Shown here: positions 5,453 through 59,100 of the stretch, one piece after another
Layout of the letters: each line of letters starts with the position of its first letter
Position numbering within the stretch: position 1 is the first letter of the stretch
From: Sphaerodactylus townsendi
Lineage: Eukaryota
Assembly (NCBI RefSeq): GCF_021028975.2
Contig: NC_059425.1
Span: 41,416,001 to 41,480,000 of the forward strand
Reading direction: 5' to 3'
Length of the DNA: 64,000 bases
Notes under the pieces: model-generated
Databases searched by the model: none
What the model was told of the DNA's origin: nothing
The model's input: the letters and a program-made list of their open reading frames with translations, nothing else
Translations under genes and position numbers: made by a program

Positions 5453-6477
5453 TTCTATTACCCCAACACCAAACCTTACAGAATCCACTGATTTTGTGCT
5501 GTCATAAGAAGCTGAGAGCAACCAGCAGGGTGGGTATGAGCAAGTTGAAGGCCACAGAAAGATAACTGGAAAATAATCTTATAGTCAGGCAAGCTTTTAG
5601 AGTCTGACCGGCTGTGGGCGGGAATAACCAGTGGGCTGCCTAGGTGGGTGAAGTCACTTTAAAATCTTGGAGGACAGAATAGGCCTTGAACCTATTTAGT
5701 GTGCAATCAGGTTTCTCAACAGGTTGTGTCCATGGCTTGCCAAGTCGCATCCCTCTGCTTCCCTTGCCCTGCAACCTTGACCTTACCTGGTGAGACAATA
5801 TGTTTTAAATCAAGTTTGGCATCCCTTTGAGCACGATTACTGTAATAAGGGAAAGGATGCTTGGTATATACTCTGTTGTACAGTATTATTTCTCTATGTC
5901 AGAATTAGGCTGGGGTGGGTGGAAGTCTGCCATTCTCCTAAGAATTACATTCTGCTGCCAGGAATCTGTGGAGCTGAGACAGGCATAAGTTGAACTTTGA
6001 GCGAAAAGGTGCAAGGCAATTAAAAATGTAAATGAATTGCTTCCTCTCCCTTGCCATAAATGAATGTCTCTATATTCCATAATACCTGTTTCCAGAAAGC
6101 TTCATAAACATACTGTCAACACTGAAATGTTAATAATGTCAGAAAAAAGACAGATTACTTAGCGTGAAGGAAGTGGTCTCAAGTATGACCTTTTCAAAAG
6201 CTTATCGTGACACTGAGAGGTACAATACCCTTCATTGGAGCCTTCATGAAAGTTTATGAAAAGACTTTCACAGATATGCAGCTGCAATTTAAATACATTA
6301 GTTCACTGTGCAGGTTGTGGGCTGCTTTCCAGCTTCCAGCTTTTAAAGAACAAGACTCTTGCATAGCTTAATTCTGCTTAGAAAATGCATCCGATTTGGA
6401 ATAAGTCTGGAGAGTACATGGATAAGAATCTTTGACGTTCAAGGCTTGAATGGAATGGACTATGTGCAGAGTAGAGA

Positions 6478-7882: not shown

Positions 7883-9827
7883 TCTGTTAAAAGCCTGTAT
7901 AAAAAGATGTGAGTAAAATTATTATTTTAGGCCCGTTCCCTAACGGAAAGTACAATTGTTTTATCCTTGCAACACAGTCATATAGGATAGGTTGAGATTG
8001 CATGCCTGGACCACAGACACCCCACAAAGCTTCTATAGCAGACTGGGGATTTGAGCCCCAACCCCAAATATAGCATCCATGTAGACTAGCATCCTGTTTC
8101 CAATGGTGGCCAGCCAAATACTTTCTGGAATTCCTCAACCCTGAGTAAAAGGCAGCTCCCACTCCTGTTTTAAGATCCTGTTTGAAGACAGAATCTAGTA
8201 TTCACCAATACACTGCCTCTGTACATGGAGCTTCCATTTATCCATCATGGCTAATAGCCATTGATTATTCTATTCTCCATCAACCTGCCCAATCCTCTTC
8301 TAAAGTCCATCTGAGACAAAGGTCATTTGCTGCATGGTGTGGCAGGAGAGGATAGGATTTCTTAACAGCATATGAATTCTGGTACCTAACTAGTAAGCCC
8401 TGTGGTCTCTCTCAGGTCTCCCTCCTCAGCCACCTATTAGTTTCTACACAAGATCTACTTACACCTCCGTTCCTTAAGAAAAAAATAACTTGTTTTTATT
8501 TTACTGTAGTGGGATTATGATTGGGGGTGGGGGGCAGACAGAGAGAGTTTATTTTTAAAAATGTCTCTCAACTGGAGAAGCAAAATTGGAGGAGTATGAA
8601 GAAATGGGAGAAAGAATTTATTCATTGCAGGAAAATGAATGGCTAGTTTAGTGAGCTCCCTCTGGCTACAGATTTTTATTTCTCCACTCCACTGAGTTTG
8701 TCTCTGGGAAGTATGTTGCTTTCATTATAGTTAGTGTGGAGCTACTTCCTCTCTTTTTTTGATTTGTTTCAGTAACAGTAATCAAGTAAATATGGTCTAA
8801 ATTTCTAATAAAATCATTTTACTACAATGTGCATTTCTTGAAAGCAAGAATCAGTTTATTCATTATGGTGAGCAGCACTTTTTTCTCTTTAATTCAGTAA
8901 CTTCTTAAAATTATATTTTATTGATTTTTCCTGTAAACCAAGGCCATATTAAAAAGAAAGGAAAGGGAAGAATGAAAACACCAGTTTACCAAGAGAGCTT
9001 ACAAAATTATAAAATAAAGTGTGTATGATAGGAATGAGCTTAAGAGCATGGGGTTACAATATGTAGTCATTAAAAAAACAAAAACAAAAGGATATTGCTG
9101 AATTTATTGATCTTTATATTTCTATTCACAATTGCAAGGCAATTGTTTATAGTTTTCTCCATGCTCAGAACAAAATTGTTGTCGTATTTTTTACAGTATT
9201 ATCAGAATTTGATAGTAGTATTAAAATTAAAGCCAGTCCCCTCATCAGTTACATAGAATTGACTGTAAAACTAGTTTTGAGTGTACATATGGCAAAAAAT
9301 GGCATGTAGCATCATAAAAATGGTGCATAAATAATATAAAAATGTTCTGTGTCAAATAAATTGTACTGTACATGAAAAACATTTGGCACATTTTGATTGA
9401 TTATCCAGTTAACTTTTCAATCAGAAAAGGTTCTGTAGTTTCAGATGCCATATTGTTAAATGCGAGTACAATTTTGATGCAAGCAAGAAGAATACTGTTT
9501 ATTTAGAATATTTATATGCCTGCCCTTTTCCTGAGCATCCAATGACCCAAGGCACTAATTATGAGTTCTTTTATAAGTTTTCAGGTCTTCTAGAATAGTT
9601 CTCAGCAGGAAAAATTTAGGGTCAAGAAATCTTGCCAGTGTTTTGATCTAGCTTCCCCCTAAATTAGTGGATTATATCATGTGTACCTTACATATGGTAC
9701 AAAGGGCCCCACAACCCACTGACATAGTTGGAAAGATATATGTACTGGGCCTTGGGAGAAGGGAGGCATCAGCAATATTTTTATCTGAATAGTACTTATT
9801 TAGTATAAGATGAGCTTCTTTTTGATG

Positions 9828-10864: not shown

Positions 10865-11372
10865 TCATATGTAACCTGTCTTTTTCCCAGTGGGGACACA
10901 AAGTGGCTTACATCATTCTCTTCTTCTCCATTTTATCCTTACCACAACCCTGTGACGTTAATTAGGCAGAGTGACTGGTTCAAGATCAGTCAGCCGGCTT
11001 CCATGGCACAGTAGCGATTCAAACCTGGGTCTCCCAGATCCTAGTCTGACGCTCTAACCTAGTGATAGCAAACCTTTTGCAATTTGCTTGTCAAAAATTC
11101 AGAAACAAGCCTAACTTGACTCTGCTAGGGTCTCCCATACAAAAAAGGGGAAACAACTCTTTACATAGTCATTAATTTTATATATATATAGAGTCCAATC
11201 ATGTGTGGTGCTATGTATTATATAAAGAAACATCAAATAATTACACAAATGATTAAAAAACACACAGAAGCAATAGTTGTTGAGTGTTGGTGAAGGCTGG
11301 CATGTCACCCAAAGTGTCATGACATGCCATCTTTGACACATCTCACTGCTCTAACTACTACATCACACAGGT
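10865..11372 (-). mobile_element. tRNA-derived SINE interrupted by a hAT MITE
   Basis: SINE body (CAACCCTGTGA...ATTCAAACCTGGGTCTCCCAGATCCTAGTCTGACGCTCTAAC) resumes after 11348 with CTCTAACTACTACATCACAC. Confidence 0.65.
11060..11348. mobile_element. hAT (Charlie-like) non-autonomous element
   Basis: Ends (T)AGTGATAGCAAACC ... TCACTG; 8-bp TSD CTCTAACC/CTCTAACT (7/8 match). Confidence 0.7.
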
Positions 11373-17150: not shown

Positions 17151-19010
17151 CCTTCATCATGTTCACTAATGAAATGGGAGGAAGTATAACCTGCTGTTCT
17201 TTGAAGTGCTCTTGTTCTGTAGCCTTGTGTAAGAGCAGTTATATGCTAAGAGAGAAGGAGATTTAAAAGCTGGAGGATCTTCACAGAATGCCTATTGTTT
17301 ACGGATCATGATTTTAACTTCATTTTATGGACCTTTACAGTCATGCCATTATGTGCTGCTCCAATGTCTTATTGGAAATCAATAGAGGTATATTTACATC
17401 TATTTCAGGTGTGCTTTCTTTGATTCTACATACCAATGTAAGAAAGCTCCTGCTGCATTTGTTTATAGCAATGGTCAGCCCCATGAGAATAGCATGAAGG
17501 CAATAACTCTCCCCATTATCGCTGACTGTCTGTCTAATATTCATAAGTTATTTGCCTGTGAACACAGATGTTCTGTGTATTTTCTTCATTTATACCCCAT
17601 CTTTCTTCCCAGTGGGGAAACAAAATTGCTTAATGCTGTTCTCCTCTCTTCCATTTTGTCCTCACAGCCGTCCTGTAAGGTAGATTAGGCTTTCATGTAT
17701 CTTTCCTGGCAAGCACCTCAAGCCTCCTTGTTTTATTTCCAGCTGTTATTGCCTGGTGCTTTTTCATTCATTAGGTGTGTGAATTCCCCTTAGGAAGGGA
17801 CTGTGGATCCACGACAGAGTCCCTGCTTTGCATGCTGAAAGCCCTATGTTGGTTCCTTTTCACCTCCATTGAAAAGTGTCTCAGGTGCTGGGACCTTTCT
17901 CTGCCTGATGCCCTGGTGACTTGGTGCCAGTCCATAAAAACAACAGTGAATTAGATGGGCCAATGATCTAGCTTTTTATTGCTTGACAGAGCAAATGAAA
18001 ACAAAATAAGAAAAGAATCTGTATACAACTGCATTCAACTCTCTCTGGGTTTTCCCCCTGCAGTGTCATCTGATAGGGAAATAATCGCCATCTTCAATGG
18101 CACTCTCACCAAAATAAGGAAATGAAAGTTTGCTGTCAAAAGATATGAAGTACACTTACTCCTCTCAAATGAAAGCCATCATTAGCCGATAAAGAGATCT
18201 GTTTGCTGTAATTTTCAACTCAGTCTTATTCAAAAGGAGTGAGTGCTGCTGGTAATGATGAGCTGTGAGTTTGACCATATTCTTGGCTTTCATAAGCGTT
18301 TTACAGTCTGTAGAATAAATTATCTGGAGGACAATAAAGCAAATGTCCTTTCTGCTTATCTCTAAGCAGACTTAGATAGTGCAGGGATTATATGTGTATC
18401 AGTCAAATCTGTGATGCTCCAGAAGAGGTTTCCCTAGTACATGGTTTGAGCAAAAGATAGTTGGCACAAAGTGATTCCTAATTGGAAGGGTAGTTTTAAT
18501 TCTGCAATAAAAAGGTAGTGCTATATTTTATACTATATTTTATGGCAAGGGAAAAAATGTTCTGTGAATGCATCGATTCTTACAAAGCTGAATTTAGCAG
18601 TCAGTACCACGTTCTATCACTTTCCTGTGCTTTTACTGAACAGCAGAACACAGACTGCTCTGACTATTGGCTTTGACACCCGTGTTTCCCACTGAATACT
18701 AATTCATTTTGGCTAGAGCAAAAGCCAGGATTGGAAGGGTGAGGTCACTAGTCCTATTGCTGTGAATTGGGTTGTTCACAGAGTTTCTATTCTATTCTCC
18801 TGCCTCGAAAACCTTGAGGGAATTAATGAGACCCAGTGGCTGGCAAACAGAATACAGTTGTGCTCAAACAGAACAGAAGATTAGAGAGAGCAGTCTAAAA
18901 TGCACAGTCTCTAGATGCTATGAAGTCAGCAGGGATCCATCACCAAGTGATAAATGCTGTAGAATGTTGTGGGTTTTCCGGGTTGTATGGCCATGTTCCA
19001 ATAGTATTTT

Positions 19011-19054
19011 CTCCTGTCGTTTCGCCTACATCTGTGGCTGGCATCTTCAGAGGA
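19011..19054 (-). ncRNA. Minimal hammerhead ribozyme motif (PLE-type), GUC>GAC at the cleavage triplet
   Basis: Minus strand reads UCCU-CUGAAGA-UGCC..GGC-GAAA-C-GAC-AGGA. Confidence 0.65.
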
Positions 19055-19098
19055 TCTGGTGGTAGTATATATACTCTACTTGCTTTACTAACACCAGA

Positions 19099-19141
19099 TC
19101 CTCTGAAGATGCCAGCCACAAATGCAGGCAAAACGTCAGGA
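19099..19141 (+). ncRNA. Minimal hammerhead ribozyme motif (PLE-type), GAAA>AAAA core change
   Basis: UCCU-CUGAAGA-UGCC..GGC-AAAA-C-GUC-AGGA. Confidence 0.65.
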
Positions 19142-20934
19142 GAAAATACTACTGGAGCACAACCATACAACCCGGAAAACCCACAATAACCTAATTATTC
19201 CGGCCGTGAAGGCCTTCGATGATAAATGCTTTCTTTTTCAGTTATCAGATTGCTCCATTATGAAATTAGTCATGTTTACAAATTTCTATCCAGAATCTGA
19301 AGTAATCGCTCCAACATTTGATACAACATAGCATCCCCTAACATAGATACCTACCTTGCTCTGCGTCAAGATCAGTCCCATCAGCCCACCGGAAAAATAT
19401 GCTGGAAAATACTTGAAAAGTTCTGCTTTAAGATGTGATAGATTTACATTTGTAGTATTTAATTATAAAAATCATCCAATATCACCGACTTTCTTCTCTA
19501 GTACGTTCAAAAAAAGTAAATCTTGCTTGTGATTGACAGGTAGAAGGTTTCCACAGCAGTTTCAGCATTCATTTTCGAAAGCCTTAGAAACAGTCCTCAG
19601 ACCTAAGTCTGGCACACATGGATTCAAGCCCCATTGCCTATATGAATCTGTTAGATATCTTTCACAAGCCAGTAAATCTAAGCCCTTCTATTAAGTGAGA
19701 ATAACCGAAATGATGCATAAGCAGCATTAGGACAAAGTGCAGCCAAATGTGCAAACTCCTGATGTGTGTGGGAATTTGAACACCTGACCTTGAGGAGAAA
19801 TGTGTAAATTATTCTTTGGAAAGATCAGTAAATGAATGAGGAAGATCCCAAGATACTGTTGATGCTAATCAGGCAAGGATCTGAGCCTGTCTTCCTGAGA
19901 AATTCTGGAGTCCCATGGTGGAAGAAAGGTGGGATATAAATGAAATAAACAAGAAGCTGACATCATGCTTTGTTTGCAATGCTTCTTTGTACCATCTGAA
20001 GGTATGCTCCTTCACAGATAGAATGCAACAATAAAATATAAGTTACACTTTACATATCATAAGCAGGAATGGTGACTGGGTCCTTTCATTGAGAAGCCTT
20101 GCTGCATTAGCATCCAGGAATCGGCCGGGGGGTGGGGGGTGGGGGGTGAAAGTGTATTGCTTGCTGTCTCTCTCAGCCTAGCATTTTTACAACTCTTCTA
20201 AAATCTCTCTCCCTCCCACCCCCAAGACCTCAGGGGATTTACAGGTGCAGACACTGAGTGCAGCTGACCTCCACAGAACCTCTCCCTGCTCCGTTAATCG
20301 CCATGGCCCCATTTTCGAAGAACATACTTTTGAGTGTTTTCCAAAACCCAATTTTCATAGTGTGCTTGCCAAGAAGTGAAACACAGCAGAATTCAAAGTA
20401 TTGAATCACAGGGATAGATTTAGACAATGCCTCTGCATTTAATAGCTCAAATTAAAGACTATTAAGCATGAGAAGATGCAAATGAATGTGCTTTAGTATT
20501 GTCCAAAGAAGACTCTTTGGCAATTTTCTCCTTCCTACTATCTGACAAATAATATTGAAGATGATGGAGAGAATCATGACAACAGGGACAATAAAGTGTG
20601 ATGTATATTCATGCAGATTTCAGGTGCTACAGAGCCACAGTTGTGATTTCTTGTTTGGGCTTTATGAGTCTATGCTGCTTTGTACCTCCAAGCCCAGTTT
20701 TTAGTTTTGCTTTAGCTCACCAAGACTTACAAATTCTCTATATTGTTTTGGTATTAGCTGTTTACAGATTAAGTCTTACTACATTTGTCAATTAATTCTT
20801 ACCTTATACCCATTGTAGGAAATTCTAGAAATCCTTCTAGGAAACAATAATTCTGTGGAGTGCCCATAATAAGTGAGATCTGCTTAACATGTGGGTCACT
20901 AATATTGCATATGTGTATTATGCACGTACTAGGG

Positions 20935-49850: not shown

Positions 49851-50660
49851 GGTGGCCACAAATCTGACCCATAACTGCTAATTCCATTTTAAAAGCATTT
49901 CTAGTTCTTCAAAAATTGCCATAACATCATAATCCAGGAGTTCTTGCTTACCCTCCTCCATATCTTTTAATGTGTTGAAACAGTTACGAGTAGATATTCA
50001 GACAGTAGCATTTCCTTACACACTGCCAGTCATATGCAAAAAATTGAGGTTTGCCTGAAGCCTATTATATTGAAAAGATTATGAAGAATGGAAGAGTGTA
50101 GGCCAGGCCTATCTGTCTCTGTGGCAGGGCCAGGCCTATCAGTCCTTTATTTCCTGTCCATACATGCCAGAACCTCTGCATCTTGTGCTGCTAATGGGAT
50201 TCAGGAGGCAAGTCAACTATGAGAATGTCTACAGAATAATATCCATCAACATATATTTTACATTTCAGGTAATTTTTGTTCTTATAGAGAAGCACTGCTT
50301 TCCTATTTGGGGCAGAACTGTGGTCAAGAGAACATGGACTTCAGATTTGAGGGAGAGGGTTTTACAGAGCACAAGGCTTCCTTTCCCCAAGTGAGCCTGA
50401 ATGGACCTCGTTCATCTTCCCAGTAGAGCCTGCTTTCTGTTCCCTCTTTGAAACAACCGGGAAAGCTGAAACTTGGGCAAGAATGAACTGCCAAATAATG
50501 TGAGAGTTGTTATACATTTACCCCCTTTGCTACACACTCATCCCACCATCTTGGGATCTCAGTTTACCTGCACTTGGACTGCCAGGAGCCATTCTAAAAA
50601 CCAAAAATGGGAGTTCTGTATCCCTTATCTAAACTAGCGCCATGAGCAGAACTGAAGTAC

Positions 50661-50977
50661 TGTAAGGAATTCCAAAGAGCAGAAATAAAAGGCTTTTGGA
50701 TGTAAGACCGTTTATTCAGACATCTTAGAAAGCACACACACACGACATGACAGGAATGAGACCTCCCGCCCAAACTACAGGTTATAACGTACTCAATCCC
50801 TTCCCCCTCCCTGGGCCATCCAGGCCCATCTCATGGGAACGGAATGCTCATCTTGGACAGCAAGATGGCTTAGATCCACCAAGGTTGTTACCCGCCCGAT
50901 TCTGGCCCGCCCTTGGTGGGGCATTCCGTCAAGACCGGGTGGCTGGGAGAGAAACAGGCAAAACTGCCATCCTTACA
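50661..50977 (-). repeat. 3' LTR
   Basis: TG...CA termini, homologous to 55796-56107, minus-strand AATAAA at ~50711-50716. Confidence 0.95.
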
Positions 50978-50989
50978 CTCTGCTTCCCC
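50978..50989 (-). promoter_or_regulatory. Polypurine tract
   Basis: Minus strand GGGGAAGCAGAG directly abuts the 3' LTR. Confidence 0.8.
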
Positions 50990-50999
50990 AGAAAACCTC

Positions 51000-53900
51000 C
51001 CGGCATCAGGAAGGCTTTGTTAAAAGAAGCAGAAATGGGGAGGGGCATCAATATTTTCTGTATATACCCATTGAGTATGGCCAGAGGGATAGCCAACCCA
51101 TGAAGACTAGATACTGTAGACGATTGCGGAGAAGCGGGAGTCCAGAATAGCATCTATTTCATAGTGCTTGTGGCCATCAATTATAACTGGCCGGGGTGGC
51201 TCCGGAGGGTGCGTGCCAAGCATCTGAAGCAGGAGCCTCAGCAGGCAAGCTGGAATGAAAAGGCTGGGATGAATGTTACTTAATGAGTTAGAGCAGTTCC
51301 AAGCGAGCAGTAACATCATTGATCACCTTTGTAATCCGAAAAGGGCCCACAAATTTCTTGCCAAGTTTTGAATATTTGTGCACGTCTCTAAGGTTTTAGT
51401 GGACAAATAGACCCATACCCAACCGCATAGGGAAGTCTGAAGCGGCAGCTGTCCGCCTGACAACTTTGTGATTCTTGGGCCTGCTGTAAGGTAGACTGCA
51501 CTGTTTCCAACCCTATTGTGAGATCCATTGTTTGAATTCTGGAGGCTGCAGTACCTCTGCGGGCAGCTGGGGCTGTGATTGGAAAGACCGATGAAACAAT
51601 CTCGAGAGCGGGGTCTTTTAGGTGCTACTATGAATAACGTTGTTATCACATACTCTGCAAAAGAGGTAAATCGCGCAATTGTCCACAATGTGCATTAGGT
51701 ATAACAAGCAATAAATACTGTTCTAACGTTCTGTTAGATCCCGTTCCTGATTGGCCGTCACTTTGAGCGTGGTAGAGGCGGCGACAGCTGGGTGGTTCCC
51801 AACAGCTCCAGGAAAGCCTTCAAAGGCTTTAGATATGAATTGGGGACGCTGATTCCGGATACCACCAATACGGAAGGTGTGAAGCGATAGATATGTTGGA
51901 TAAACAACTGGAGCCAGTTTAAGGTGCCCGGCGGGATGGTGGTGCAAGGAATGAAATAAGCCTGTTTGAAAAAAAGATCCACCACCACCCATAAAACGGT
52001 GTTCCGATGGCTTTCCACGGCAAATCATTATAAAATCCATGGAAATGACCTGCCAGAGTCCGAGATGCAACTGGGAGGGGTTTTAATAACCCATGCGGCT
52101 TCCAGTTATCGACTTGGCTTCCGCACAGGCGGAACACTTGCTGATGCTCGTTTCCAATGTCTTTAGCATGGAAGCGCCACCAGAACTGTCGGCCAGACCC
52201 AGATGCAACGTTTTGAAAACCCAGTGCCAACCTGGCCGGGCATCGCGACACATTCGAGAACCTGCTTCCGGAGGAGAGGAGGGCGATACCAACACCCTCC
52301 CATTTCAAACACCACCCTCTAAAATGCAGTTGTGAATCTCCTTCCTCCGCCCGACAGTTAGCGGAGCCCGCCTCTGAATCCCCGGAGGAAGGGAAGGCGA
52401 TATTAGGATGAATTACGGTGGGGAGGAACGCCGTAGTTTGTGATTGGGTGACCGCTAATCCCAGCTGGGAGGGAGAGCGATGCGTGGGATGTCTCGTATG
52501 TCTTCCCCAGGGGAGGCGAGACAAGCGCATCAGCCAGTTTATTGCTTTACGGGGAAGAAATGGACTGTGAAAGAGAACCTGGAGAAAAAATCATTGCGCC
52601 AATTGTTTTGCAGACATTTTGAGTGGAGTGGATAGGGGCAACCAGATTTTTGTGATCTGACCAGACCTGGAAAGGGTGTTTGGCTCCTTCCAGCCAATGG
52701 CGTAAACACTCAATGCAGCTTTGATAACTGCGGTCTCCTTATCCCCACAGTCCAATTTAGTTCAGCCCCAGAAAACTTTTTTGGACAAGTAAGCACCTGG
52801 TACCAATTTGTTATTTTATTTTTTCTGCAAGAGGGGCAGCCTAGCGCTTTATCGAAACATCCACATGCGATGAAAGGAAGATCTGGGTCTGGGTTACTTA
52901 AATTGGTTCCGTAGTAAAAGCTGTTTTTAGTTGCTGGAATGCTGACTAGCATTCTTGAGACCAGAAGAGGAGCTCGGGTTTAAATACTCTGAGTCTTTGC
53001 CTTTGTACATAAAGAGATCGGTGGTATTGAGCAATTTCAACCAAATCGGGGAATAAAGTCACAGTAGAAATTGGCAAAGCCTAGGAAGGATTGCAGTTCC
53101 TTCCTGTTGGTGGGGGCAGGCCATTCTCAGTCACAAGCCTTTATTGGCATAAAATAAACATACAAAATCAGCATACAAAATTTGCCCATTATTGCTCACA
53201 ATTATAGACACTGGTACTAAAATACTAAATACTAAAATATATACATGGTCCTTCTGTAACTATAGGACATTCCTTCAGCTAAGTTAACTCACTTAAACGT
53301 CATCGGATACTGACAGAAGCCTAGGAAGGATTGCAGTTCCTAGTTGAATGGTTGCAGTTCCTAGTTGAATGGCAGGCCATTCAATCACTGCGGCTATTTT
53401 AGCTGGGTCCATTTCCAAACCCTCATGAGAGATTCGATACCCCAGATAGTCTATGGAGGAGCGATGGAAACAGCATTTTGACAACTTGACAAAGAGGGAG
53501 TTATCTAGTAGACGTTGTAAAGACTTCATTACTAGTTTCTCATGCTCCTCAATGGTTTGTGTGCGGTAAATTAATACATCATCTAAATATACGACCACCT
53601 TTATATAACAGATCTTGTAAAACTTCGTTGATAAAGGGCCATGAAGGCTCCCTGGGGCTCCAGCTAATCCGAATGGCATTATTAAATATTCATATTGTCC
53701 AAACTTTGTGAAAGCTGTCAAGTGTTGCGTGGCCTTCCATAATCTGGACTCTATAATAAACCTCTCTCAAGTCCAGCTTGGTAAAGATTAATGCCCAATG
53801 CATCCAAGAGGTCTTTAATTAAGGGGCAAAGGATACTTGTTTGGATATGGACACAGCATTCAATCCGATAAATCAGTACAAAGTCTTAACAGACCATCCT

Positions 53901-54578
53901 TTTTCTTAACAAATAGAACAGGCATGGGTATGTTTGTAACTCGTCATTATGAATCCAGCGAGCAAGTTTTTTTTATCTAAGAGAGCGGAGTTCCTTCTCC
54001 CCAGTGGGAGCTCATCGATGGGTCTACCTTTGGGTAGCTGAGCTCCGGGTTGCAGTAAGATTTTGCAGTCAGTATCCCTATGGGGAGTGGTGGTCGCACT
54101 CCTGTTCTTGAAACACTCTGGACAAGTCTCGATCGCCTCACGGGATTTCCGCGGGAACAGGAATGGAACAATACATTTTAAAACTTTGGGACCCATGAGT
54201 TCGTTCTCAGTGAGAGGTGGACTTTCCTCCCGTTCATGTGATCTCCACAGAGGGGGATCCGAGGGTGGAGGGATCCGCTCTTTCCATATGATGGTTGGAT
54301 TGTTGTAAGAGCAACCAAGGCATGCCTAACACAATAGAGTGTTTGCTTAACAGGAGCAAGGATGAAACTTATTTTCTCCCAATGAATTACGGCTGAGGAG
54401 AAATACTGGCTGGGTTTGAAACGTGCGGACCTTCACGCCCCCTAGAGGAGCTACCATCCATTTTGGGTGAAGGGAATGGGTTTCACCAAGGGGACTTCGG
54501 TCTAAACCAAGTTAAATTGACCACTTGTGGTCTCATGAGACAGTGGGAACAGCCCGAGTCCACAAGTGCGGAAGCCAG
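51000..54578 (-). pseudogene. pol: Frameshifted pol: protease, RT, RNase H, integrase, chromodomain
   Basis: ALVDSGCS (~54545-54570); TAFTKFGQYEYLIMPFGL and VVVYLDDVLIY (53293-53721 ORF); [19 protein letters not shown] (~52645-52700); WQVISMDFI and VVVDLF (~51975-52055); PVIIDGHKHYEIDAILDSR (~51135-51195). Confidence 0.92.
53127..53316 (-). mobile_element. AT-rich LINE-like 3'-UTR fragment inserted in the Gypsy RT
   Basis: Ends TGCCAATAAAGGCTTG on the minus strand; flanked by duplicated RT sequence AAGCCTAGGAAGGATTGCAGTTCC. Confidence 0.5.
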
Positions 54579-54580
54579 AA

Positions 54581-54639
54581 TGTAAGGAATTCCAAAGAGC
54601 AGAAATAAAAGGCTTTTGGATGTAAGACCGTTTATTCAG
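54581..54639 (-). repeat. Internal 59-bp copy of the LTR U5 end
   Basis: Identical to 50661-50719. Confidence 0.92.
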
Positions 54640-55600
54640 GGGAGAGAAACTGTAGGCGCGCGGGAGAAGGTGTGGGCGCTGTCTGGAGCCCTTGCCAGTG
54701 TAGCCCGCTGCCTTGCATAAAATCCCCTGTTCCAGGTCGGTAACTCCCTTTCCTTAGCGTGTTAAAGCGTCCTAGATGCGCATGCAAGGCAGCCCTTTCA
54801 CGATCCAATTTGCTCGTTCATCTACGTTGTATGGCTGTAGTCAGTTCATTCTGTGTTTGGATGGCCCTGATGCTCGCACTGGCGTTGTAAATCCATTTTG
54901 ATTGATCCAGTACCTTGTCATGAACTGTCAGATTCTGCTGGAACTGTTGGCCTTAGCAGCTTCTCTTCGCGATCCAACTCCATTTGGATTTCTTTGCGTT
55001 GCTTCTCGCGGTCCATTGCAGATTTTTAGCTCCTCTTCCCAGAGTTGGCCTCGCTCCCAGGCAAGTTTGGCCTTTACTCACAGCAGGGGCCACTTCATCA
55101 TCCCAACTTTCGCCGAGGGGCGGTAGAGGCAGGTCAGGGGTCGGATTAAGTTCCATCTCAGGCGGATTTCTTTCAATTCCCTCCGACCGCTCCACGAAGC
55201 TCTTCCATCCAGCTCACTTGCTCCGGCTCTGGAGCCGCCAGTTTTAGTATGGAACCCTCTACCGATCATGCGACCCGACCCAGCGTCATTGTTCCAGCCT
55301 CAGCCGTAGTCTTGGGGCTGGCCCGGTACTATGCCACTGCTGCTCCTTGGGGATATCATCAAAGTACTTGTCGAGGAATCTTCGATGGATTCTAGGTGTC
55401 AGCATGGATGGTCGTTAGTCCCAGTTCCTCAGGGACTGGTTGCATTTGGGTTTGTAATCCACTTTCGCTGGCCGGAGGGAAACGAACGGTGCGACAGGCG
55501 CCGATCCATGGACAATGCACCAAGCGTTTCATGCATCTCCAGCGATGGGACCCACCTTGTTCATCCCAATGAAACAGAACGAAACTTGTACTGTCTCTAG
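54640..55600 (-). pseudogene. gag: Frameshifted gag region
   Basis: Lies between the 5' leader and protease; fragments such as LQWTARSNAKKSKWSW; boundaries approximate. Confidence 0.55.
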
Positions 55601-55783
55601 GTCTGGAGAGAGTCACCAGCAGAGAAATCAGACCATCTCCATCTCCTGGATCCGCCGGAATCTGGAAGGGAAGGCTCGAAGCCCTCTATGGAACTGTCGT
55701 GCCTTCCACTATGGTCAAACACCTCCAATCTCTGCATGTGAAACACAGAGATCCACTTCAATGTAACAGTGAAGGTTAAAGTG

Positions 55784-55795
55784 ATTCCTGTCATG
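55784..55795 (-). promoter_or_regulatory. Self-priming primer-binding site
   Basis: Minus strand CATGACAGGAAT directly follows the 5' LTR and is complementary to LTR-internal ATTCCTGTCATG (55887-55876); it lacks the TGG start of a tRNA PBS. Confidence 0.85.
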
Positions 55796-56107
55796 TGTAA
55801 GAATTTAAAAGAGCAGAAATAAAGGCTTTGGATGTAAGACCGTTTATTGAACATCTTAGAAAGCACACACCGCGACATGACAGGAATGAGACCTCCATGC
55901 CCAAACTACAGGTTATAGCATTACTCAATCCCTCCCCCTCCCTGGGCCATCCAGGCCCATCTCATGGGAACGGAATGCTCATCCTGGACAGCAAGATAAG
56001 CCGTCCACCAAGGTTGTTGCCGCCGATTCTGGCCCGCCGCCCGGGTGGAGGCATTCCGTCAAGGCCAGGTGGCTGGGAGAGAAACAGGCAAAACTGCCAT
56101 CCTTACA
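55796..56107 (-). repeat. 5' LTR
   Basis: TG...CA termini; TATAA at 55917-55913; Inr-like TCATTCC with A at 55887. Confidence 0.95.
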
Positions 56108-59100
56108 AGTACTGGGTGCCAAGGGGTTTGATCCAGTAATACTTTACCATGACAATGACAGGATGCCCAGAAAGCCAGAATTGATCTGTTGATTCTATTT
56201 TTCCTCTCCTCTATCCATCAGAGTAAAAATTTCAGCCCTTCTTCTTGCGTACTTCAATTACATTAATGTATCCATCACAAAGACTATAACTTGCCTTCTG
56301 TCATTCAGCAAATGGTGCCAGACAGAATTGTTTAGGGGGGCCTTTGGCTGAATTTGGGATGGGGGTTGGAGGGGACTTGTTTTGCTTTACGATTGTTGAT
56401 TTTAACTTATGCTATGTGTAAACCAACTGGAGTTTCCATCGGAAAAACTGTATATAATTATACTAAATGAATCAGACCTCTTCCACAACTGGGCTGTTCA
56501 ATTTGAAAGGTTGACAACATTATTTCACCTTTGATCTGTGGAAAGGAATTCAGTTTGTTGCTGGTTATTATGCACAGGTGAGGAAAACTGTACCTACTAA
56601 CAGAAATCCCATTTTCTTCAGCTCACCTGTTCTAGATATTTTGTTCCTAACAGTATCCAAAAAGGAAGAAATGAGTAAATGTGCTTTATGGTATTAGTTT
56701 CATATTAATGATGGGGCACAGAGCAAATCAGAGAGGTGTATCTACATTATTATTGTGCAGCATCTAACACTGACCATTTTCAGACACAAAGCCTGTCTGA
56801 GAAAGATGTTCACTTGGCACACCTTATTTTTGATTGTTCCTTAACAATGAAGTTCCTCAGAGACTGAGATGAATGTCAATGAGATCGACAGAAGCAAATG
56901 ATGGAGGAAGCGAGGATGGTTATCCTAAGGAAAAAGGAAGATTAAGGCTTAGTAGGCAAAGAGGGATGTGATGGCAATTAGGAAAGGCTCTCCAGACTGT
57001 CAAGGGAAACTGATGTTCAGTTCAGAGCAGCTGTTAATAGTCATGCCTGGCTGAGATTTGTGCTTTGACTGTCCAGGTAATGCTAGCTTCAAGAGCACTG
57101 CAACAGAATATCAATATCCACAAGAGAGGATCACTAGCTGTCACAGCACCAGTCTGCGAAGCTTCTGTAAGCTGATTTCTTGCAGAATCTGCTTCTCTTT
57201 CCACTGCCATTTGGCTAGTGTGGTTGTTTCACAGGGAAAATGTCTTTTCAATACTTGGGTTTTTTTTAAAGGGTTTGTATGTACAGCTTTTGATCTCAGG
57301 TACTTGTCCTCAAAGAGGATATGGTAGACTTGAGTGAAGTGCAAATTTCCTTTGTCACCTTAAAGAACCTTGGCAAATGCATTACAGTGACAAATGCATT
57401 ACAGTATTCACTGTCACTGTCCAGGCAATGAGACGTTACTGTAGTTCCAGTTTCTCAGTGTCTGTGTGACAGAGAATCCAGTTTGCTAGGCGCTGGATGC
57501 ACTGAATATATCAAAATAAATAAAGAGGCAACCTGTGGTCTTGAATGTTTTCTTCAAGCCAAGAAAAATACCAATAAGCAGAGCTTGGCTAGAGATAGTT
57601 TTATTGTAGAAATTTTACCTCTGTTTCTGTAGAGTTACTGCTTTGCATTCCCTACTCTTGAATATCCACAGATAGCCTGCAGTGTGTCAGGCAGCCCAAT
57701 CCACAGAGGTCCAGTGGCCTGGGACAGCATCGCTCCAACACCTTCTCCAGAGGACTTCCAGGCAGCACAAGGAGGCAATAAAAAGGGGAAAAAACACGTT
57801 CACCTGAAAAGCCCTCCTTGGGGCTGAACAGGAAGCCTGAAGCCTGTGCTAAAGTGTTCCCAGTTCGAAAGCCTGAGTGCAGAGGCTGGGTGCAAGGTGG
57901 AAAGTGCCCGGTGCACTGGTGCATCCTCCACCTCTGTCCCGCACCAGAATGACGTTGTCCTGCCCCAGAACGCCCCTGCCATGCCCTTGCCACATCTCCA
58001 CAGGGGCGCGTGCCCGGTGCATTGCACGCGCCCTTCCCCCTTGGAGCTACACCTCTGCCTAAGTGGAAACCGACTGATGTTGGCTCCACCCCCAGGAATG
58101 CCCCAGCCATTCCCCACATCAGTGTCCTCTCAGATGCCAGCATAGCTCCACGGTGGTGCCCACATCTGGGTTTGGCTGCCACAGAGCTGTGGGGCACCTA
58201 GATGTTGCCATTTTTGCCCCCTCCACTATAATGGGTGCCCTTAAACAGCCGGAGTGGGTAAATGTGCTAGCGCGGCCTTCTGCTGCTTCCAGACATCATT
58301 TCGACCTCACATCTGGATTGGGTTGTTAAATCCATTGGGTTTTCAAAAAACTTTTGAATGTACAGAGTTCTGTTTTTCTCCCCTGAATTAATGCAGTTGC
58401 TCAAACTGTATGCAGTGGAATTACGGATGGTACATATAGCTTTATATTACAAAATTGGTGATTGTTGTTCAGGGTTTCTTTCTAATTGCTTTGTACGCTG
58501 CACACTGCATGGCAAAAACAGAATAAGAAGTTGTATCTGCATGTGAACATGTATGCAAACTGTTGTGAAAAGTACTTTATTGAGGTTTAATAACCCATAG
58601 GTCATTTACCAACAGAATTTAAGAAATAGAAATAACAACATTTAGCTATGAACTGTGCAATTTTTACTATAGCCACCACATAAAAATAACCTTAGTTTGT
58701 GAACATCTGAAGCATCGTAGTCACTTTGCAAGAAATTTCTCCCTCGCAATGGCATGCTTTGGACAATTAAAAAAAACCCCTGTGAAATAATGAATCATTC
58801 ACTAGTAAGGGACAGTCACGAAGACACTGTTCTGGTAGCATCTTAAGGAAACGACATTAGTTTGAGCTATAGGCAATGCATTGTAGTGTGCTGTCATGTA
58901 CAACCACCTCAATTTGCAAACTGTCAGCATACAAAAGTAGAGTGGGAGTTCAGTCAACTGAGTATTTCTTTCCTGCATAAAACAAAGAACATTTCCTTCC
59001 AACACTTTTAAGCAAAAGGTCCCAATCTTGTCTGAGAAGTTGCTCGGAAATTAGTCCTCTCTTCCTCTCTATTAGACAGTTCAAAGGCCTCCATGAGCTC

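What the first reader, a model, noticed from the sequence alone, without database searches (positions are those of the whole stretch)
55784..55917. tRNA-independent self-priming architecture in a reptile LTR retrotransposon
Seen (minus strand): TATAA at 55917-55913 and an initiator TCATTCC whose A (55887) lies exactly 30 nt downstream, predicting a transcript starting AUUCCUGUCAUG. The 12 nt directly after the 5' LTR are CAUGACAGGAAU, the perfect complement (13 bp with the terminal LTR A), and there is no TGG-type tRNA PBS. The same 5' sequence is conserved in the 3' LTR (50746-50757). Known: fission-yeast Tf1 primes reverse transcription with its own first 11 nt, and this has been proposed for vertebrate Tf1/sushi elements. 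Inference: a near-complete, young vertebrate self-priming element suitable for direct testing.
Basis: partly seen in the sequence, partly recalled or inferred. Interest (0 to 1): 0.8.

Follow-up and report, generated by a model that had tools for sequence, protein, structure and literature searches.

The report
Self-priming signal in dead lizard-type retrotransposon

Summary
On the minus strand, CATGACAGGAAT (55795-55784) follows the 5' LTR directly. It is the exact reverse complement of 55887-55876, or 13 bp counting the last LTR base. The paired segment starts 30 nt after TATAA, on the A of a perfect initiator. There is no TGG-type PBS. Chance of such a match is about 2.5e-5.

The element is a complete insertion: LTRs 56107-55796 and 50977-50661, 5-bp duplication GTACT, polypurine tract, gag-PR-RT-RH-INT-chromodomain order. 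Its coding region is ruined: longest open stretch 223 aa, at least 8 frame changes and more than 25 in-frame stops in pol. The LTRs are only about 89.5% alike. "Near-complete, young, suitable for direct testing" is therefore not supported.

All three vertebrate relatives whose LTR/PBS junction I could fetch show the same layout with unrelated primer sequences: the lizard Sceloporus and the frogs Ascaphus and Mixophyes. This between-family covariation supports self-priming.

Self-priming in Tf1/sushi elements of yeast and vertebrates is already in the literature. The scan also noted it elsewhere in this genome (s1-740306, unchecked). The transcription start is untested because no RNA runs were found.

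Verdict: new member of a known kind, low interest.

The parts
56108..56112 (-). Target-site duplication GTACT, 5' side
   Evidence: Read directly. The same 5-mer lies at 50660-50656. A contig from organism D joins 56107 to 50654, i.e. an empty site with a single copy (record 25).
55796..56107 (-). 5' LTR, 312 nt, TGTAAGG...TCTTACA
   Evidence: blastn and alignment to the 3' LTR, 89.5% identity including gaps.
55913..55917 (-). TATAA box, also kept in the 3' LTR
   Evidence: Sequence.
55884..55890 (-). Initiator TCATTCC with predicted +1 at A55887
   Evidence: Matches YYANWYY and lies 30 nt after the TATA box. This is a prediction only; no RNA data were available.
55875..55887 (-). Putative self-primer: first 12-13 nt of the predicted transcript (ATTCCTGTCATG+T)
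   Evidence: Exact complement of the PBS. It is paired to the PBS in the MFE and centroid folds.
55843..55848 (-). AATAAA poly(A) signal, 47 nt before the LTR end
   Evidence: Sequence, conserved in the 3' LTR. Its position near the LTR end matches what PMC3601003 describes for sushi-type LTRs.
55784..55795 (-). Primer-binding site CATGACAGGAAT, directly after the LTR. It contains the first ATG (55794-55792) of the frame that follows.
54640..55783 (-). Leader and gag remnant, heavily broken
   Evidence: Six-frame reading. There is no significant Pfam or tblastn match; gag-like motifs are seen by eye only.
54581..54639 (-). Internal copy of the last 59 nt of U5, 100% identical to the 3' LTR end and 91% to the 5' LTR. 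It sits at the gag/pol border.
   Evidence: blastn.
53374..54580 (-). Protease and reverse transcriptase remnants (DSG near 54560, YLDD near 53640)
   Evidence: Pfam RVT_1 on 53296-53766, E 5.9e-12. tblastn of lizard and frog pol, 40-42% identity over RT.
53102..53316 (-). AT-rich insert between 25-nt direct repeats (53341-53317 and 53101-53077) in the RT/RNase H linker
   Evidence: Contigs of other copies skip 293-307 nt here (joints).
52523..53126 (-). RNase H remnant
   Evidence: tblastn. Faint Pfam RT_RNaseH_2, E 0.019.
51294..52214 (-). Integrase remnant
   Evidence: tblastn of Mixophyes and Sceloporus integrase, E about 1e-15.
51005..51368 (-). Integrase C-terminal SH3 (Tf2-1-like) and chromodomain remnants
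   Evidence: tblastn hits fall on the parts of the frog ORFs that Pfam calls SH3_Tf2-1 and Chromo: 56% identity over 41 aa and 29-30% over 46-68 aa.
50978..50989 (-). Polypurine tract GGGGAAGCAGAG directly before the 3' LTR
   Evidence: Sequence.
50661..50977 (-). 3' LTR, 317 nt, with a copy of the self-primer sequence at 50757-50746
50656..50660 (-). Target-site duplication GTACT, 3' side
   Evidence: Sequence; empty site in organism D.

Best explanation
This is one dead, structurally full-length insertion of a Ty3/gypsy chromovirus of the vertebrate sushi-like kind. It retains the cis-acting layout for Tf1-type self-primed reverse transcription.

Inferred mechanism, by analogy with Tf1/Tf2:
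1. RNA polymerase II starts at or near A55887, 30 nt after the TATA box.
2. The first 12-13 nt of the RNA fold back onto the PBS that directly follows U5, closing a 78-nt R-U5 loop.
3. The element-encoded RNase H cuts behind the paired 5' segment.
4. The freed 3'-OH primes minus-strand strong-stop DNA. The polypurine tract and the TG..CA LTR ends then serve the remaining steps.

Shown here: the exact complementarity, its position, its improbability, the predicted fold, the lack of a tRNA-type PBS, and recurrence of the layout with different sequences in related vertebrate elements.

Inferred only: the transcription start, the RNase H cut and the priming itself.

This copy encodes no working protein, so it could only ever have used the signal with proteins supplied by other copies.
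For: - Sequence and coordinates.
- Chance of a complement of 13 nt or more next to the LTR: 2.5e-5.
- Fold: the 5' end pairs with the PBS in MFE and centroid structures, z = -3.7.
- Full insertion anatomy: LTRs, TSD, PPT, and an empty site in a related organism.
- Colinear PR-RT-RH-INT-SH3-chromodomain homology to lizard and frog chromoviruses.
- Cross-family covariation. Loci were chosen only by RT similarity, and all three vertebrate relatives with a readable junction show the layout:
  - Sceloporus L001: PBS TTTGCCAAAACT, 1 nt after the LTR, complements L001 5461-5472 (chance 3.5e-4).
  - Ascaphus L004: TATGCTCAGC complements a site 30 nt after TATATA (chance 5e-3).
  - Mixophyes L005: AAGATCAGGC complements a site 31 nt after TATATTAA (chance 9e-3).
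  - Sources. The leaders of L001 and L004 also fold with the 5' end on the PBS.
- Contrast: a non-vertebrate relative, L002, has an ordinary TGG PBS and no such complement.
- Literature: the Tf1/Tf2 mechanism and its extension to vertebrate sushi-group elements (PMC5341516, PMC4600332, PMC6317226).
Against: - No RNA data exist for this genome in the runs offered, so the start at 55887 rests on TATA and initiator consensus only.
- Covariation among copies of the same family could not be read. The read-laying output did not list the PBS or R-start positions, and that bin had low depth.
- Host tRNAs and tRNA fragments could not be screened; there are no tRNA genes in the window.
- With about 5% change per LTR lineage, 26 unchanged paired bases are not surprising on their own (P about 0.27), so this copy alone shows no selection on the pairing.
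- Placement among named Tf1/sushi references was not achieved. The RT tree is inconclusive, with the window on a branch of length 2.7.
Confidence: 0.8

Rival explanations
1. The 5'-end/PBS helix is real but serves another purpose, such as masking the gag start codon, packaging or RNA circularisation. Reverse transcription would then be primed by something else.
For: The first ATG of the gag frame lies inside the PBS here (55794-55792). It lies inside or within 7 nt of the PBS in the three relatives, so the helix would also occlude translation initiation.
Against: No alternative primer site is visible. There is no TGG-type PBS within about 40 nt of the LTR in the window or at the LTR border of the three vertebrate relatives. 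In Tf1/Tf2 the same layout has been shown experimentally to prime (PMC5341516, PMC4600332). A dual role is possible and would not contradict self-priming.
Confidence: 0.08
2. The PBS binds a host RNA, such as an internal part of a tRNA or a tRNA fragment. The match to the LTR would then be secondary.
For: Host tRNAs could not be screened. Some copia-type elements use tRNA halves (PMC6317226).
Against: The four related elements have four unrelated PBS sequences. Each matches its own LTR at the promoter-proximal position. A shared host primer would give shared PBS sequences. No PBS starts with TGG.
Confidence: 0.05
3. The complementarity is a chance match in a decaying repeat.
For: This copy is dead and its pairing cannot be shown to be under selection on its own.
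Against: Chance is 2.5e-5 for this element. It is 3.5e-4, 5e-3 and 9e-3 for the three relatives. In the window and in the two frog elements the complement starts 30-31 nt after a TATA box.
Confidence: 0.01

Closest known systems
Tf1/Tf2 of Schizosaccharomyces pombe (and Tj1 of S. japonicus): self-primed LTR retrotransposons
   Same: The PBS sits directly after the 5' LTR and complements the start of the element's own transcript (11 nt in Tf1, 12-13 here). There is no tRNA PBS. The element is a chromodomain-bearing Ty3/gypsy type, and its integrase C-terminus is homologous to the Pfam 'Tf2-1-like SH3' domain found in its relatives. Mechanism as described in PMC5341516 and PMC4600332.
   Different: The host is a vertebrate, and the LTR and primer sequences are unrelated. 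Here the transcription start, RNase H cut and priming are untested, and the copy encodes no proteins. Only low-resolution sequence kinship was shown: RT about 40-50% identical to fungal and vertebrate chromoviruses.
Vertebrate Tf1/sushi group, the 'V-clade' chromoviruses (sushi-ichi, Amn elements): Butler et al. 2001, cited in PMC6317226 and PMC4600332; V-clade in PMC2774666
   Same: Vertebrate chromovirus with gag-PR-RT-RH-INT-chromodomain order and a predicted self-primer. AATAAA lies close to the LTR 3' end and the LTR ends in CNTNACA, as PMC3601003 reports for sushi LTRs. The nearest proteins are frog, fish and lizard chromoviruses, some named 'Transposon Tf2-x polyprotein' by their sources.
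   Different: It is a different family with its own LTR and primer sequence. The copy is strongly decayed, and its placement on an RT tree is unresolved. The original Butler et al. paper is not held in the library, so its details could not be compared.
Sceloporus undulatus chromovirus on contig JAGXEY010001386.1 (locus L001)
   Same: It has a 12-nt PBS 1 nt after the LTR that complements a site upstream of AATAAA in its own LTR, and the gag ATG lies 7 nt after the PBS. It is the nearest element to the window's RT by tree path.
   Different: RT is only about 41-46% identical to the window and the LTR is unrelated. Its reading frames are long (1255 and 409 aa stop to stop), whereas the window copy is broken throughout.

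Membership tests
Self-primed (Tf1-type) LTR retrotransposons | PBS directly 3' of the 5' LTR complementary to the element's own R region, not to a tRNA 3' end | tested here: met
   12 nt, or 13 with the last LTR base, are exactly complementary. No TGG occurs within about 40 nt of the LTR. Chance 2.5e-5.
Self-primed (Tf1-type) LTR retrotransposons | The complementary segment is the very 5' end of the transcript | not testable with these tools
   Predicted only: TATAA at -30 and a perfect initiator with +1 at 55887. No RNA runs were found.
Self-primed (Tf1-type) LTR retrotransposons | RNase H cut behind the paired 5' segment frees the primer | not testable with these tools
   This is a biochemical step, and the element's own RNase H is broken.
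Self-primed (Tf1-type) LTR retrotransposons | Primer and PBS covary among related elements | tested here: met
   Between families: window, Sceloporus, Ascaphus and Mixophyes each have a different PBS matched by their own LTR. Within the family: not tested, because one search did not resolve those positions.
Chromovirus (Ty3/gypsy with integrase chromodomain) | gag-PR-RT-RH-INT order | tested here: met
   Colinear tblastn hits of lizard and frog polyproteins from 54310 to 51005. Pfam RVT_1. gag is seen only by eye.
Chromovirus (Ty3/gypsy with integrase chromodomain) | Chromodomain at the integrase C-terminus | tested here: met
   51208-51005 aligns to the parts of the frog ORFs that Pfam calls Chromo, and 51368-51246 aligns to SH3_Tf2-1. 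Caveat: Pfam itself finds nothing on the window's broken pieces.
Vertebrate Tf1/sushi group (V-clade) | Groups with named Tf1/sushi references in an RT or pol phylogeny | tested here: inconclusive
   No named reference sequences were at hand. In a 20-taxon RT tree the window sits on a branch of length 2.7 with no supported grouping; the nearest by path is the Sceloporus element. The nearest database proteins are frog, lizard, fungal and charophyte chromoviruses at 40-50% identity.
Vertebrate Tf1/sushi group (V-clade) | Sushi-type LTR ends TGTYANR ... CNTNACA and AATAAA near the LTR 3' end (PMC3601003) | tested here: inconclusive
   The 3' LTR ends CCTTACA, which fits; the 5' LTR ends TCTTACA. 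The LTR starts TGTAAGG, where position 4 is A rather than Y. AATAAA is 47 nt from the LTR end, which fits.

The most novel reading that the evidence does not exclude
In this family and its vertebrate relatives the self-primer/PBS helix contains or abuts the gag start codon: ATG 55794-55792 lies inside the PBS here, and the ATG lies inside or within 7 nt of the PBS in Sceloporus, Ascaphus and Mixophyes. One RNA could therefore either be translated or primed, never both. In addition, the window's family may be a high-copy lineage that spreads without coding capacity, keeping only the LTR, self-primer, PBS and PPT and borrowing proteins from other chromoviruses.
Probability: 0.15. Interest if true: 0.5.

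Novelty: new member of a known kind. Interest (0 to 1): 0.22.

Why it matters
Self-priming has been shown experimentally only in fission-yeast elements. For vertebrate sushi-type elements it is a sequence-based prediction. Another vertebrate family with a clean 13-bp primer/PBS pair, together with three relatives showing the same layout with different sequences, strengthens that prediction. This copy is a coding wreck, however, and adds no new principle. Better-preserved natural copies exist, for example the Sceloporus contig L001. The practical value is for annotation: LTR-finding pipelines that require a tRNA PBS will miss or mis-score these elements.

Tried and rejected
- RNA evidence for the start site: the look-up of sequencing runs returned no RNA run, so this was not testable.
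- Covariation within the family: contigs from four runs were laid on 50500-56300. The family is very abundant, but the output did not list the PBS or R-start positions, and the bin 55738-55931 had low depth because repeat contigs were placed on the 3' LTR. No answer.
- Same-family proteins:
  - The word search with the RT piece gave 2 distant hits.
  - The exhaustive search gave nothing above about 50% identity; the top scores were inflated by proteins with two RT copies. No close copy could be fetched.
  - One frog locus (P0004) came back without DNA.
- Pfam on 20 stop-free pieces found only RVT_1. At a permissive threshold there was also a faint RNase H.
- RT phylogeny was inconclusive because of the window's long branch.
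- A hairpin straddling the start site, an idea from scan note s1-740307: an 8-bp stem can form, but it is no better than shuffled sequence (z about -0.5 in both LTRs). Not supported here.
- tRNA genes and Rfam families in the window: none found. Host tRNAs could therefore not be compared with the PBS.
- Ten long ORFs elsewhere in the window had no Pfam match, so the host could not be identified. 'Reptile' stays unverified.
- Lin & Levin 1997 and Atwood-Moore 2006 are not held in the library. Their content is cited only through papers that cite them.

Full report
**Observation**

Read on the minus strand, the finding is exact.
- The 5' LTR runs 56107-55796 (TGTAAGG...TCTTACA).
- TATAA is at 55917-55913.
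- The initiator-like TCATTCC is at 55890-55884, and its A at 55887 lies 30 nt after the TATA box.
- From that A the LTR reads ATTCCTGTCATG (55887-55876).
- The 12 bases directly after the LTR, CATGACAGGAAT (55795-55784), are its exact reverse complement.
- Counting the last LTR base (A55796) against T55875 gives 13 bp. Pairing stops on both sides.
- The first TGG after the LTR is about 40 nt away, so there is no tRNA-3'-end type PBS at the border.

In 200,000 Markov-shuffled LTR/downstream pairs, a complement of 13 nt or more near the LTR end arose 5 times (2.5e-5). The predicted 113-nt leader folds with nt 1-13 on nt 92-104 in both the minimum-energy and centroid structures (z about -3.7).

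**What the element is**

The two LTRs (312 and 317 nt) are flanked by the same 5-mer, GTACT (56112-56108 and 50660-50656). A polypurine tract, GGGGAAGCAGAG (50989-50978), abuts the 3' LTR.

Polyproteins of a lizard and two frog chromoviruses align colinearly to the interior:

| Domain | Window coordinates |
|---|---|
| Protease/RT | 54310-53374 |
| RNase H | 53126-52523 |
| Integrase | 52214-51294 |
| C-terminal SH3 and chromodomain | 51368-51005 |

The last stretch matches the parts of those proteins that Pfam calls SH3_Tf2-1 and Chromo. It is therefore a Ty3/gypsy chromovirus.

The nearest proteins in a 1.8-billion-protein library are only 40-50% identical in RT. They come from frogs (Bombina, Ranitomeya, Pseudophryne, Ascaphus, Mixophyes), the lizard Sceloporus undulatus, smut fungi and Chara. 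That vertebrate-plus-fungal mix fits what PMC2774666 reports, a strong similarity between the vertebrate 'V-clade' (sushi- and Amn-like) and fungal chromoviruses. Fish relatives of the frog element carry source names such as 'Transposon Tf2-6 polyprotein'. A 20-taxon RT tree could not place the window securely: its branch length is 2.7, and the nearest element by path is the Sceloporus one.

**State of the copy**

The coding region is destroyed.
- The longest stop-free stretch is 223 aa.
- The three frames hold 56, 47 and 77 stops over 4.8 kb, close to what random sequence would give.
- Following pol through the alignments needs at least 8 frame changes and crosses more than 25 stops.
- Pfam recognises only part of RT, plus a faint RNase H.
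- The LTRs are 89.5% identical with gaps counted. Substitution distance is roughly 0.08-0.12, depending on how indel-rich patches are aligned.

'Near-complete and young, suitable for direct testing' is therefore not supported.

The insertion is lineage-specific, though. Contigs from two coded organisms carry the LTR/flank junctions unchanged. One contig from a third organism joins 56107 directly to 50654, a clean empty site, with flanks about 3-4% different. The LTR difference exceeds that flank difference. The 3' LTR also attracts far more family contigs than the R-U5 part of the 5' LTR. The 5' LTR may therefore have been altered after insertion, for example by conversion from another copy. 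I could not settle this.

The family is abundant. Summed contig depths are hundreds to thousands of times the single-copy depth of about 70. Yet no protein from it appears in the databases, which is compatible with a family that spreads without its own coding capacity. That is an inference only.

**Test of the self-priming reading in relatives**

I fetched DNA for relatives chosen only by RT similarity.

| Locus | Source | Outcome |
|---|---|---|
| P0004 (no locus) | Ranitomeya | No DNA returned |
| L003 | ENA metagenome contig, host unknown | Lacked the 5' junction |
| L002 | Non-vertebrate | Ordinary PBS starting TGG 2 nt after a 145-nt LTR; no self-complement |
| L001 | Sceloporus | Self-priming layout |
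| L004 | Ascaphus | Self-priming layout |
| L005 | Mixophyes | Self-priming layout |

All three vertebrate loci with a readable junction show the window's layout, each with a different sequence:
- **Sceloporus L001.** The LTR ends at base 47 (and at 5572). TTTGCCAAAACT at 49-60 complements 5461-5472, upstream of AATAAA.
- **Ascaphus L004.** TATGCTCAGC, just after the LTR, complements 8388-8397, 30 nt after TATATA.
- **Mixophyes L005.** AAGATCAGGC complements 11333-11342, 31 nt after TATATTAA.

The chance values are 3.5e-4, 5e-3 and 9e-3. The Sceloporus and Ascaphus leaders also fold with the 5' end on the PBS.

Four unrelated primer/PBS pairs in four related elements are covariation at the between-family level. 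They argue against a shared host primer such as a tRNA. Covariation among copies of the window's own family could not be read from the laid contigs.

**Mechanism**

The shown and inferred steps must be kept apart.

Shown here: the complementarity, its position, its improbability, the fold, the absence of a tRNA-type PBS, and the recurrence in relatives.

Inferred from Tf1/Tf2 (PMC5341516, PMC4600332):
1. Transcription starts at about 55887.
2. The 5' end anneals to the PBS.
3. The element's RNase H cuts behind the paired segment.
4. The freed end primes minus-strand strong-stop synthesis through U5 and R, followed by transfer to the 3' R.

No RNA run was on offer, so the start site is only a consensus prediction.

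**Comparison with what is known**

[quoted passage not shown] 2001, Lin & Levin 1997 and Atwood-Moore et al. 2006. [quoted passage not shown] PMC3670739 reports full-length chromoviral lineages in reptile genomes. The scan itself holds an unchecked note on another piece of this genome, s1-740306: four Gypsy LTRs with their own 11-nt self-primers.

The finding is thus a correct recognition of a known design in one more family. It is not a new principle, and this copy is not a usable test substrate. The Sceloporus contig, with reading frames of 1255 and 409 aa, is far better preserved.

**Side observations**

- The first ATG of the frame after the LTR lies inside the PBS (55794-55792). In the three relatives the gag ATG lies inside or within 7 nt of the PBS. 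The helix would therefore also hide the start codon, giving a possible translate-or-prime switch. This is speculative.
- A 59-nt copy of the U5 end sits at the gag/pol border (54639-54581). It is 100% identical to the 3' LTR but only 91% to the 5' LTR. Its origin is unexplained.
- An AT-rich insert flanked by 25-nt repeats interrupts the RT/RNase H linker. Other copies skip about 300 nt there.

**Limits and rules observed**

The host could not be named because run and organism names are coded.

Noticed in passing
window 54581-54639 (minus strand): A 59-nt copy of the very end of U5, from just before AATAAA to the terminal TTACA, sits inside the element at the gag/pol border, directly before the protease DSG motif. 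It is 100% identical to the 3' LTR but only 91% to the 5' LTR. All five differences are private to the 5' LTR. That points to a later copying event, conversion of the 5' LTR, or an assembly artefact.
   Followed up: partly
window 53077-53341 (minus strand): 25-nt direct repeats (53341-53317 and 53101-53077) flank an AT-rich stretch of about 215 nt in the RT/RNase H linker, and the coding motif around them is duplicated. Contigs of other family copies skip 293-307 nt here and carry 26-40 other letters instead.
   Followed up: partly
window 50654/56107 junction; read-laying run X8, record 25: A 2779-nt contig from coded organism D joins the two flanks directly, an empty site with one copy of the GTACT target and flanks about 3-4% different. 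The two LTRs differ by 8-12%, more than an insertion younger than that split should show. The 3' LTR also recruits far more family contigs than the R-U5 part of the 5' LTR. The LTR 'clock' is unreliable for this copy.
   Followed up: partly
window 55792-55794; L001 67-69; L004 8763-8765 and 8781-8783; L005 13079-13081: In all four self-priming elements the first in-frame ATG of the gag frame lies inside the PBS or within 7 nt after it. In three of the four elements the frame opens Met-Thr. The primer/PBS helix would therefore cover the start codon.
   Followed up: partly
L001 (Sceloporus undulatus contig JAGXEY010001386.1), 1-5572: The contig starts and ends in the same LTR (its first 47 nt equal its last 47). 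It carries a chromovirus with long reading frames (1255 and 409 aa stop to stop), a 12-nt self-priming PBS and a microsatellite-rich U3. It is a much better preserved natural example than the window copy.
   Followed up: partly
L004 7970-18969 (Ascaphus) and L005 11156-31564 (Mixophyes): The frog relatives sit in tandem arrays that share LTRs: LTR-internal-LTR-internal-LTR, with two units in Ascaphus and three in Mixophyes at over 99.8% identity. This explains why gene models there contain two RT domains. The Mixophyes LTR is 1.9 kb with internal 77-nt repeats.
   Followed up: no
window 1-64000, including 18959-19219: An Rfam gathering-threshold scan of the whole window found no RNA family and ARAGORN found no tRNA. 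The scan's separate note of a hammerhead pair at 18959-19219 (s1-740407) therefore gets no Rfam support at gathering score. It was not examined further.
   Followed up: no
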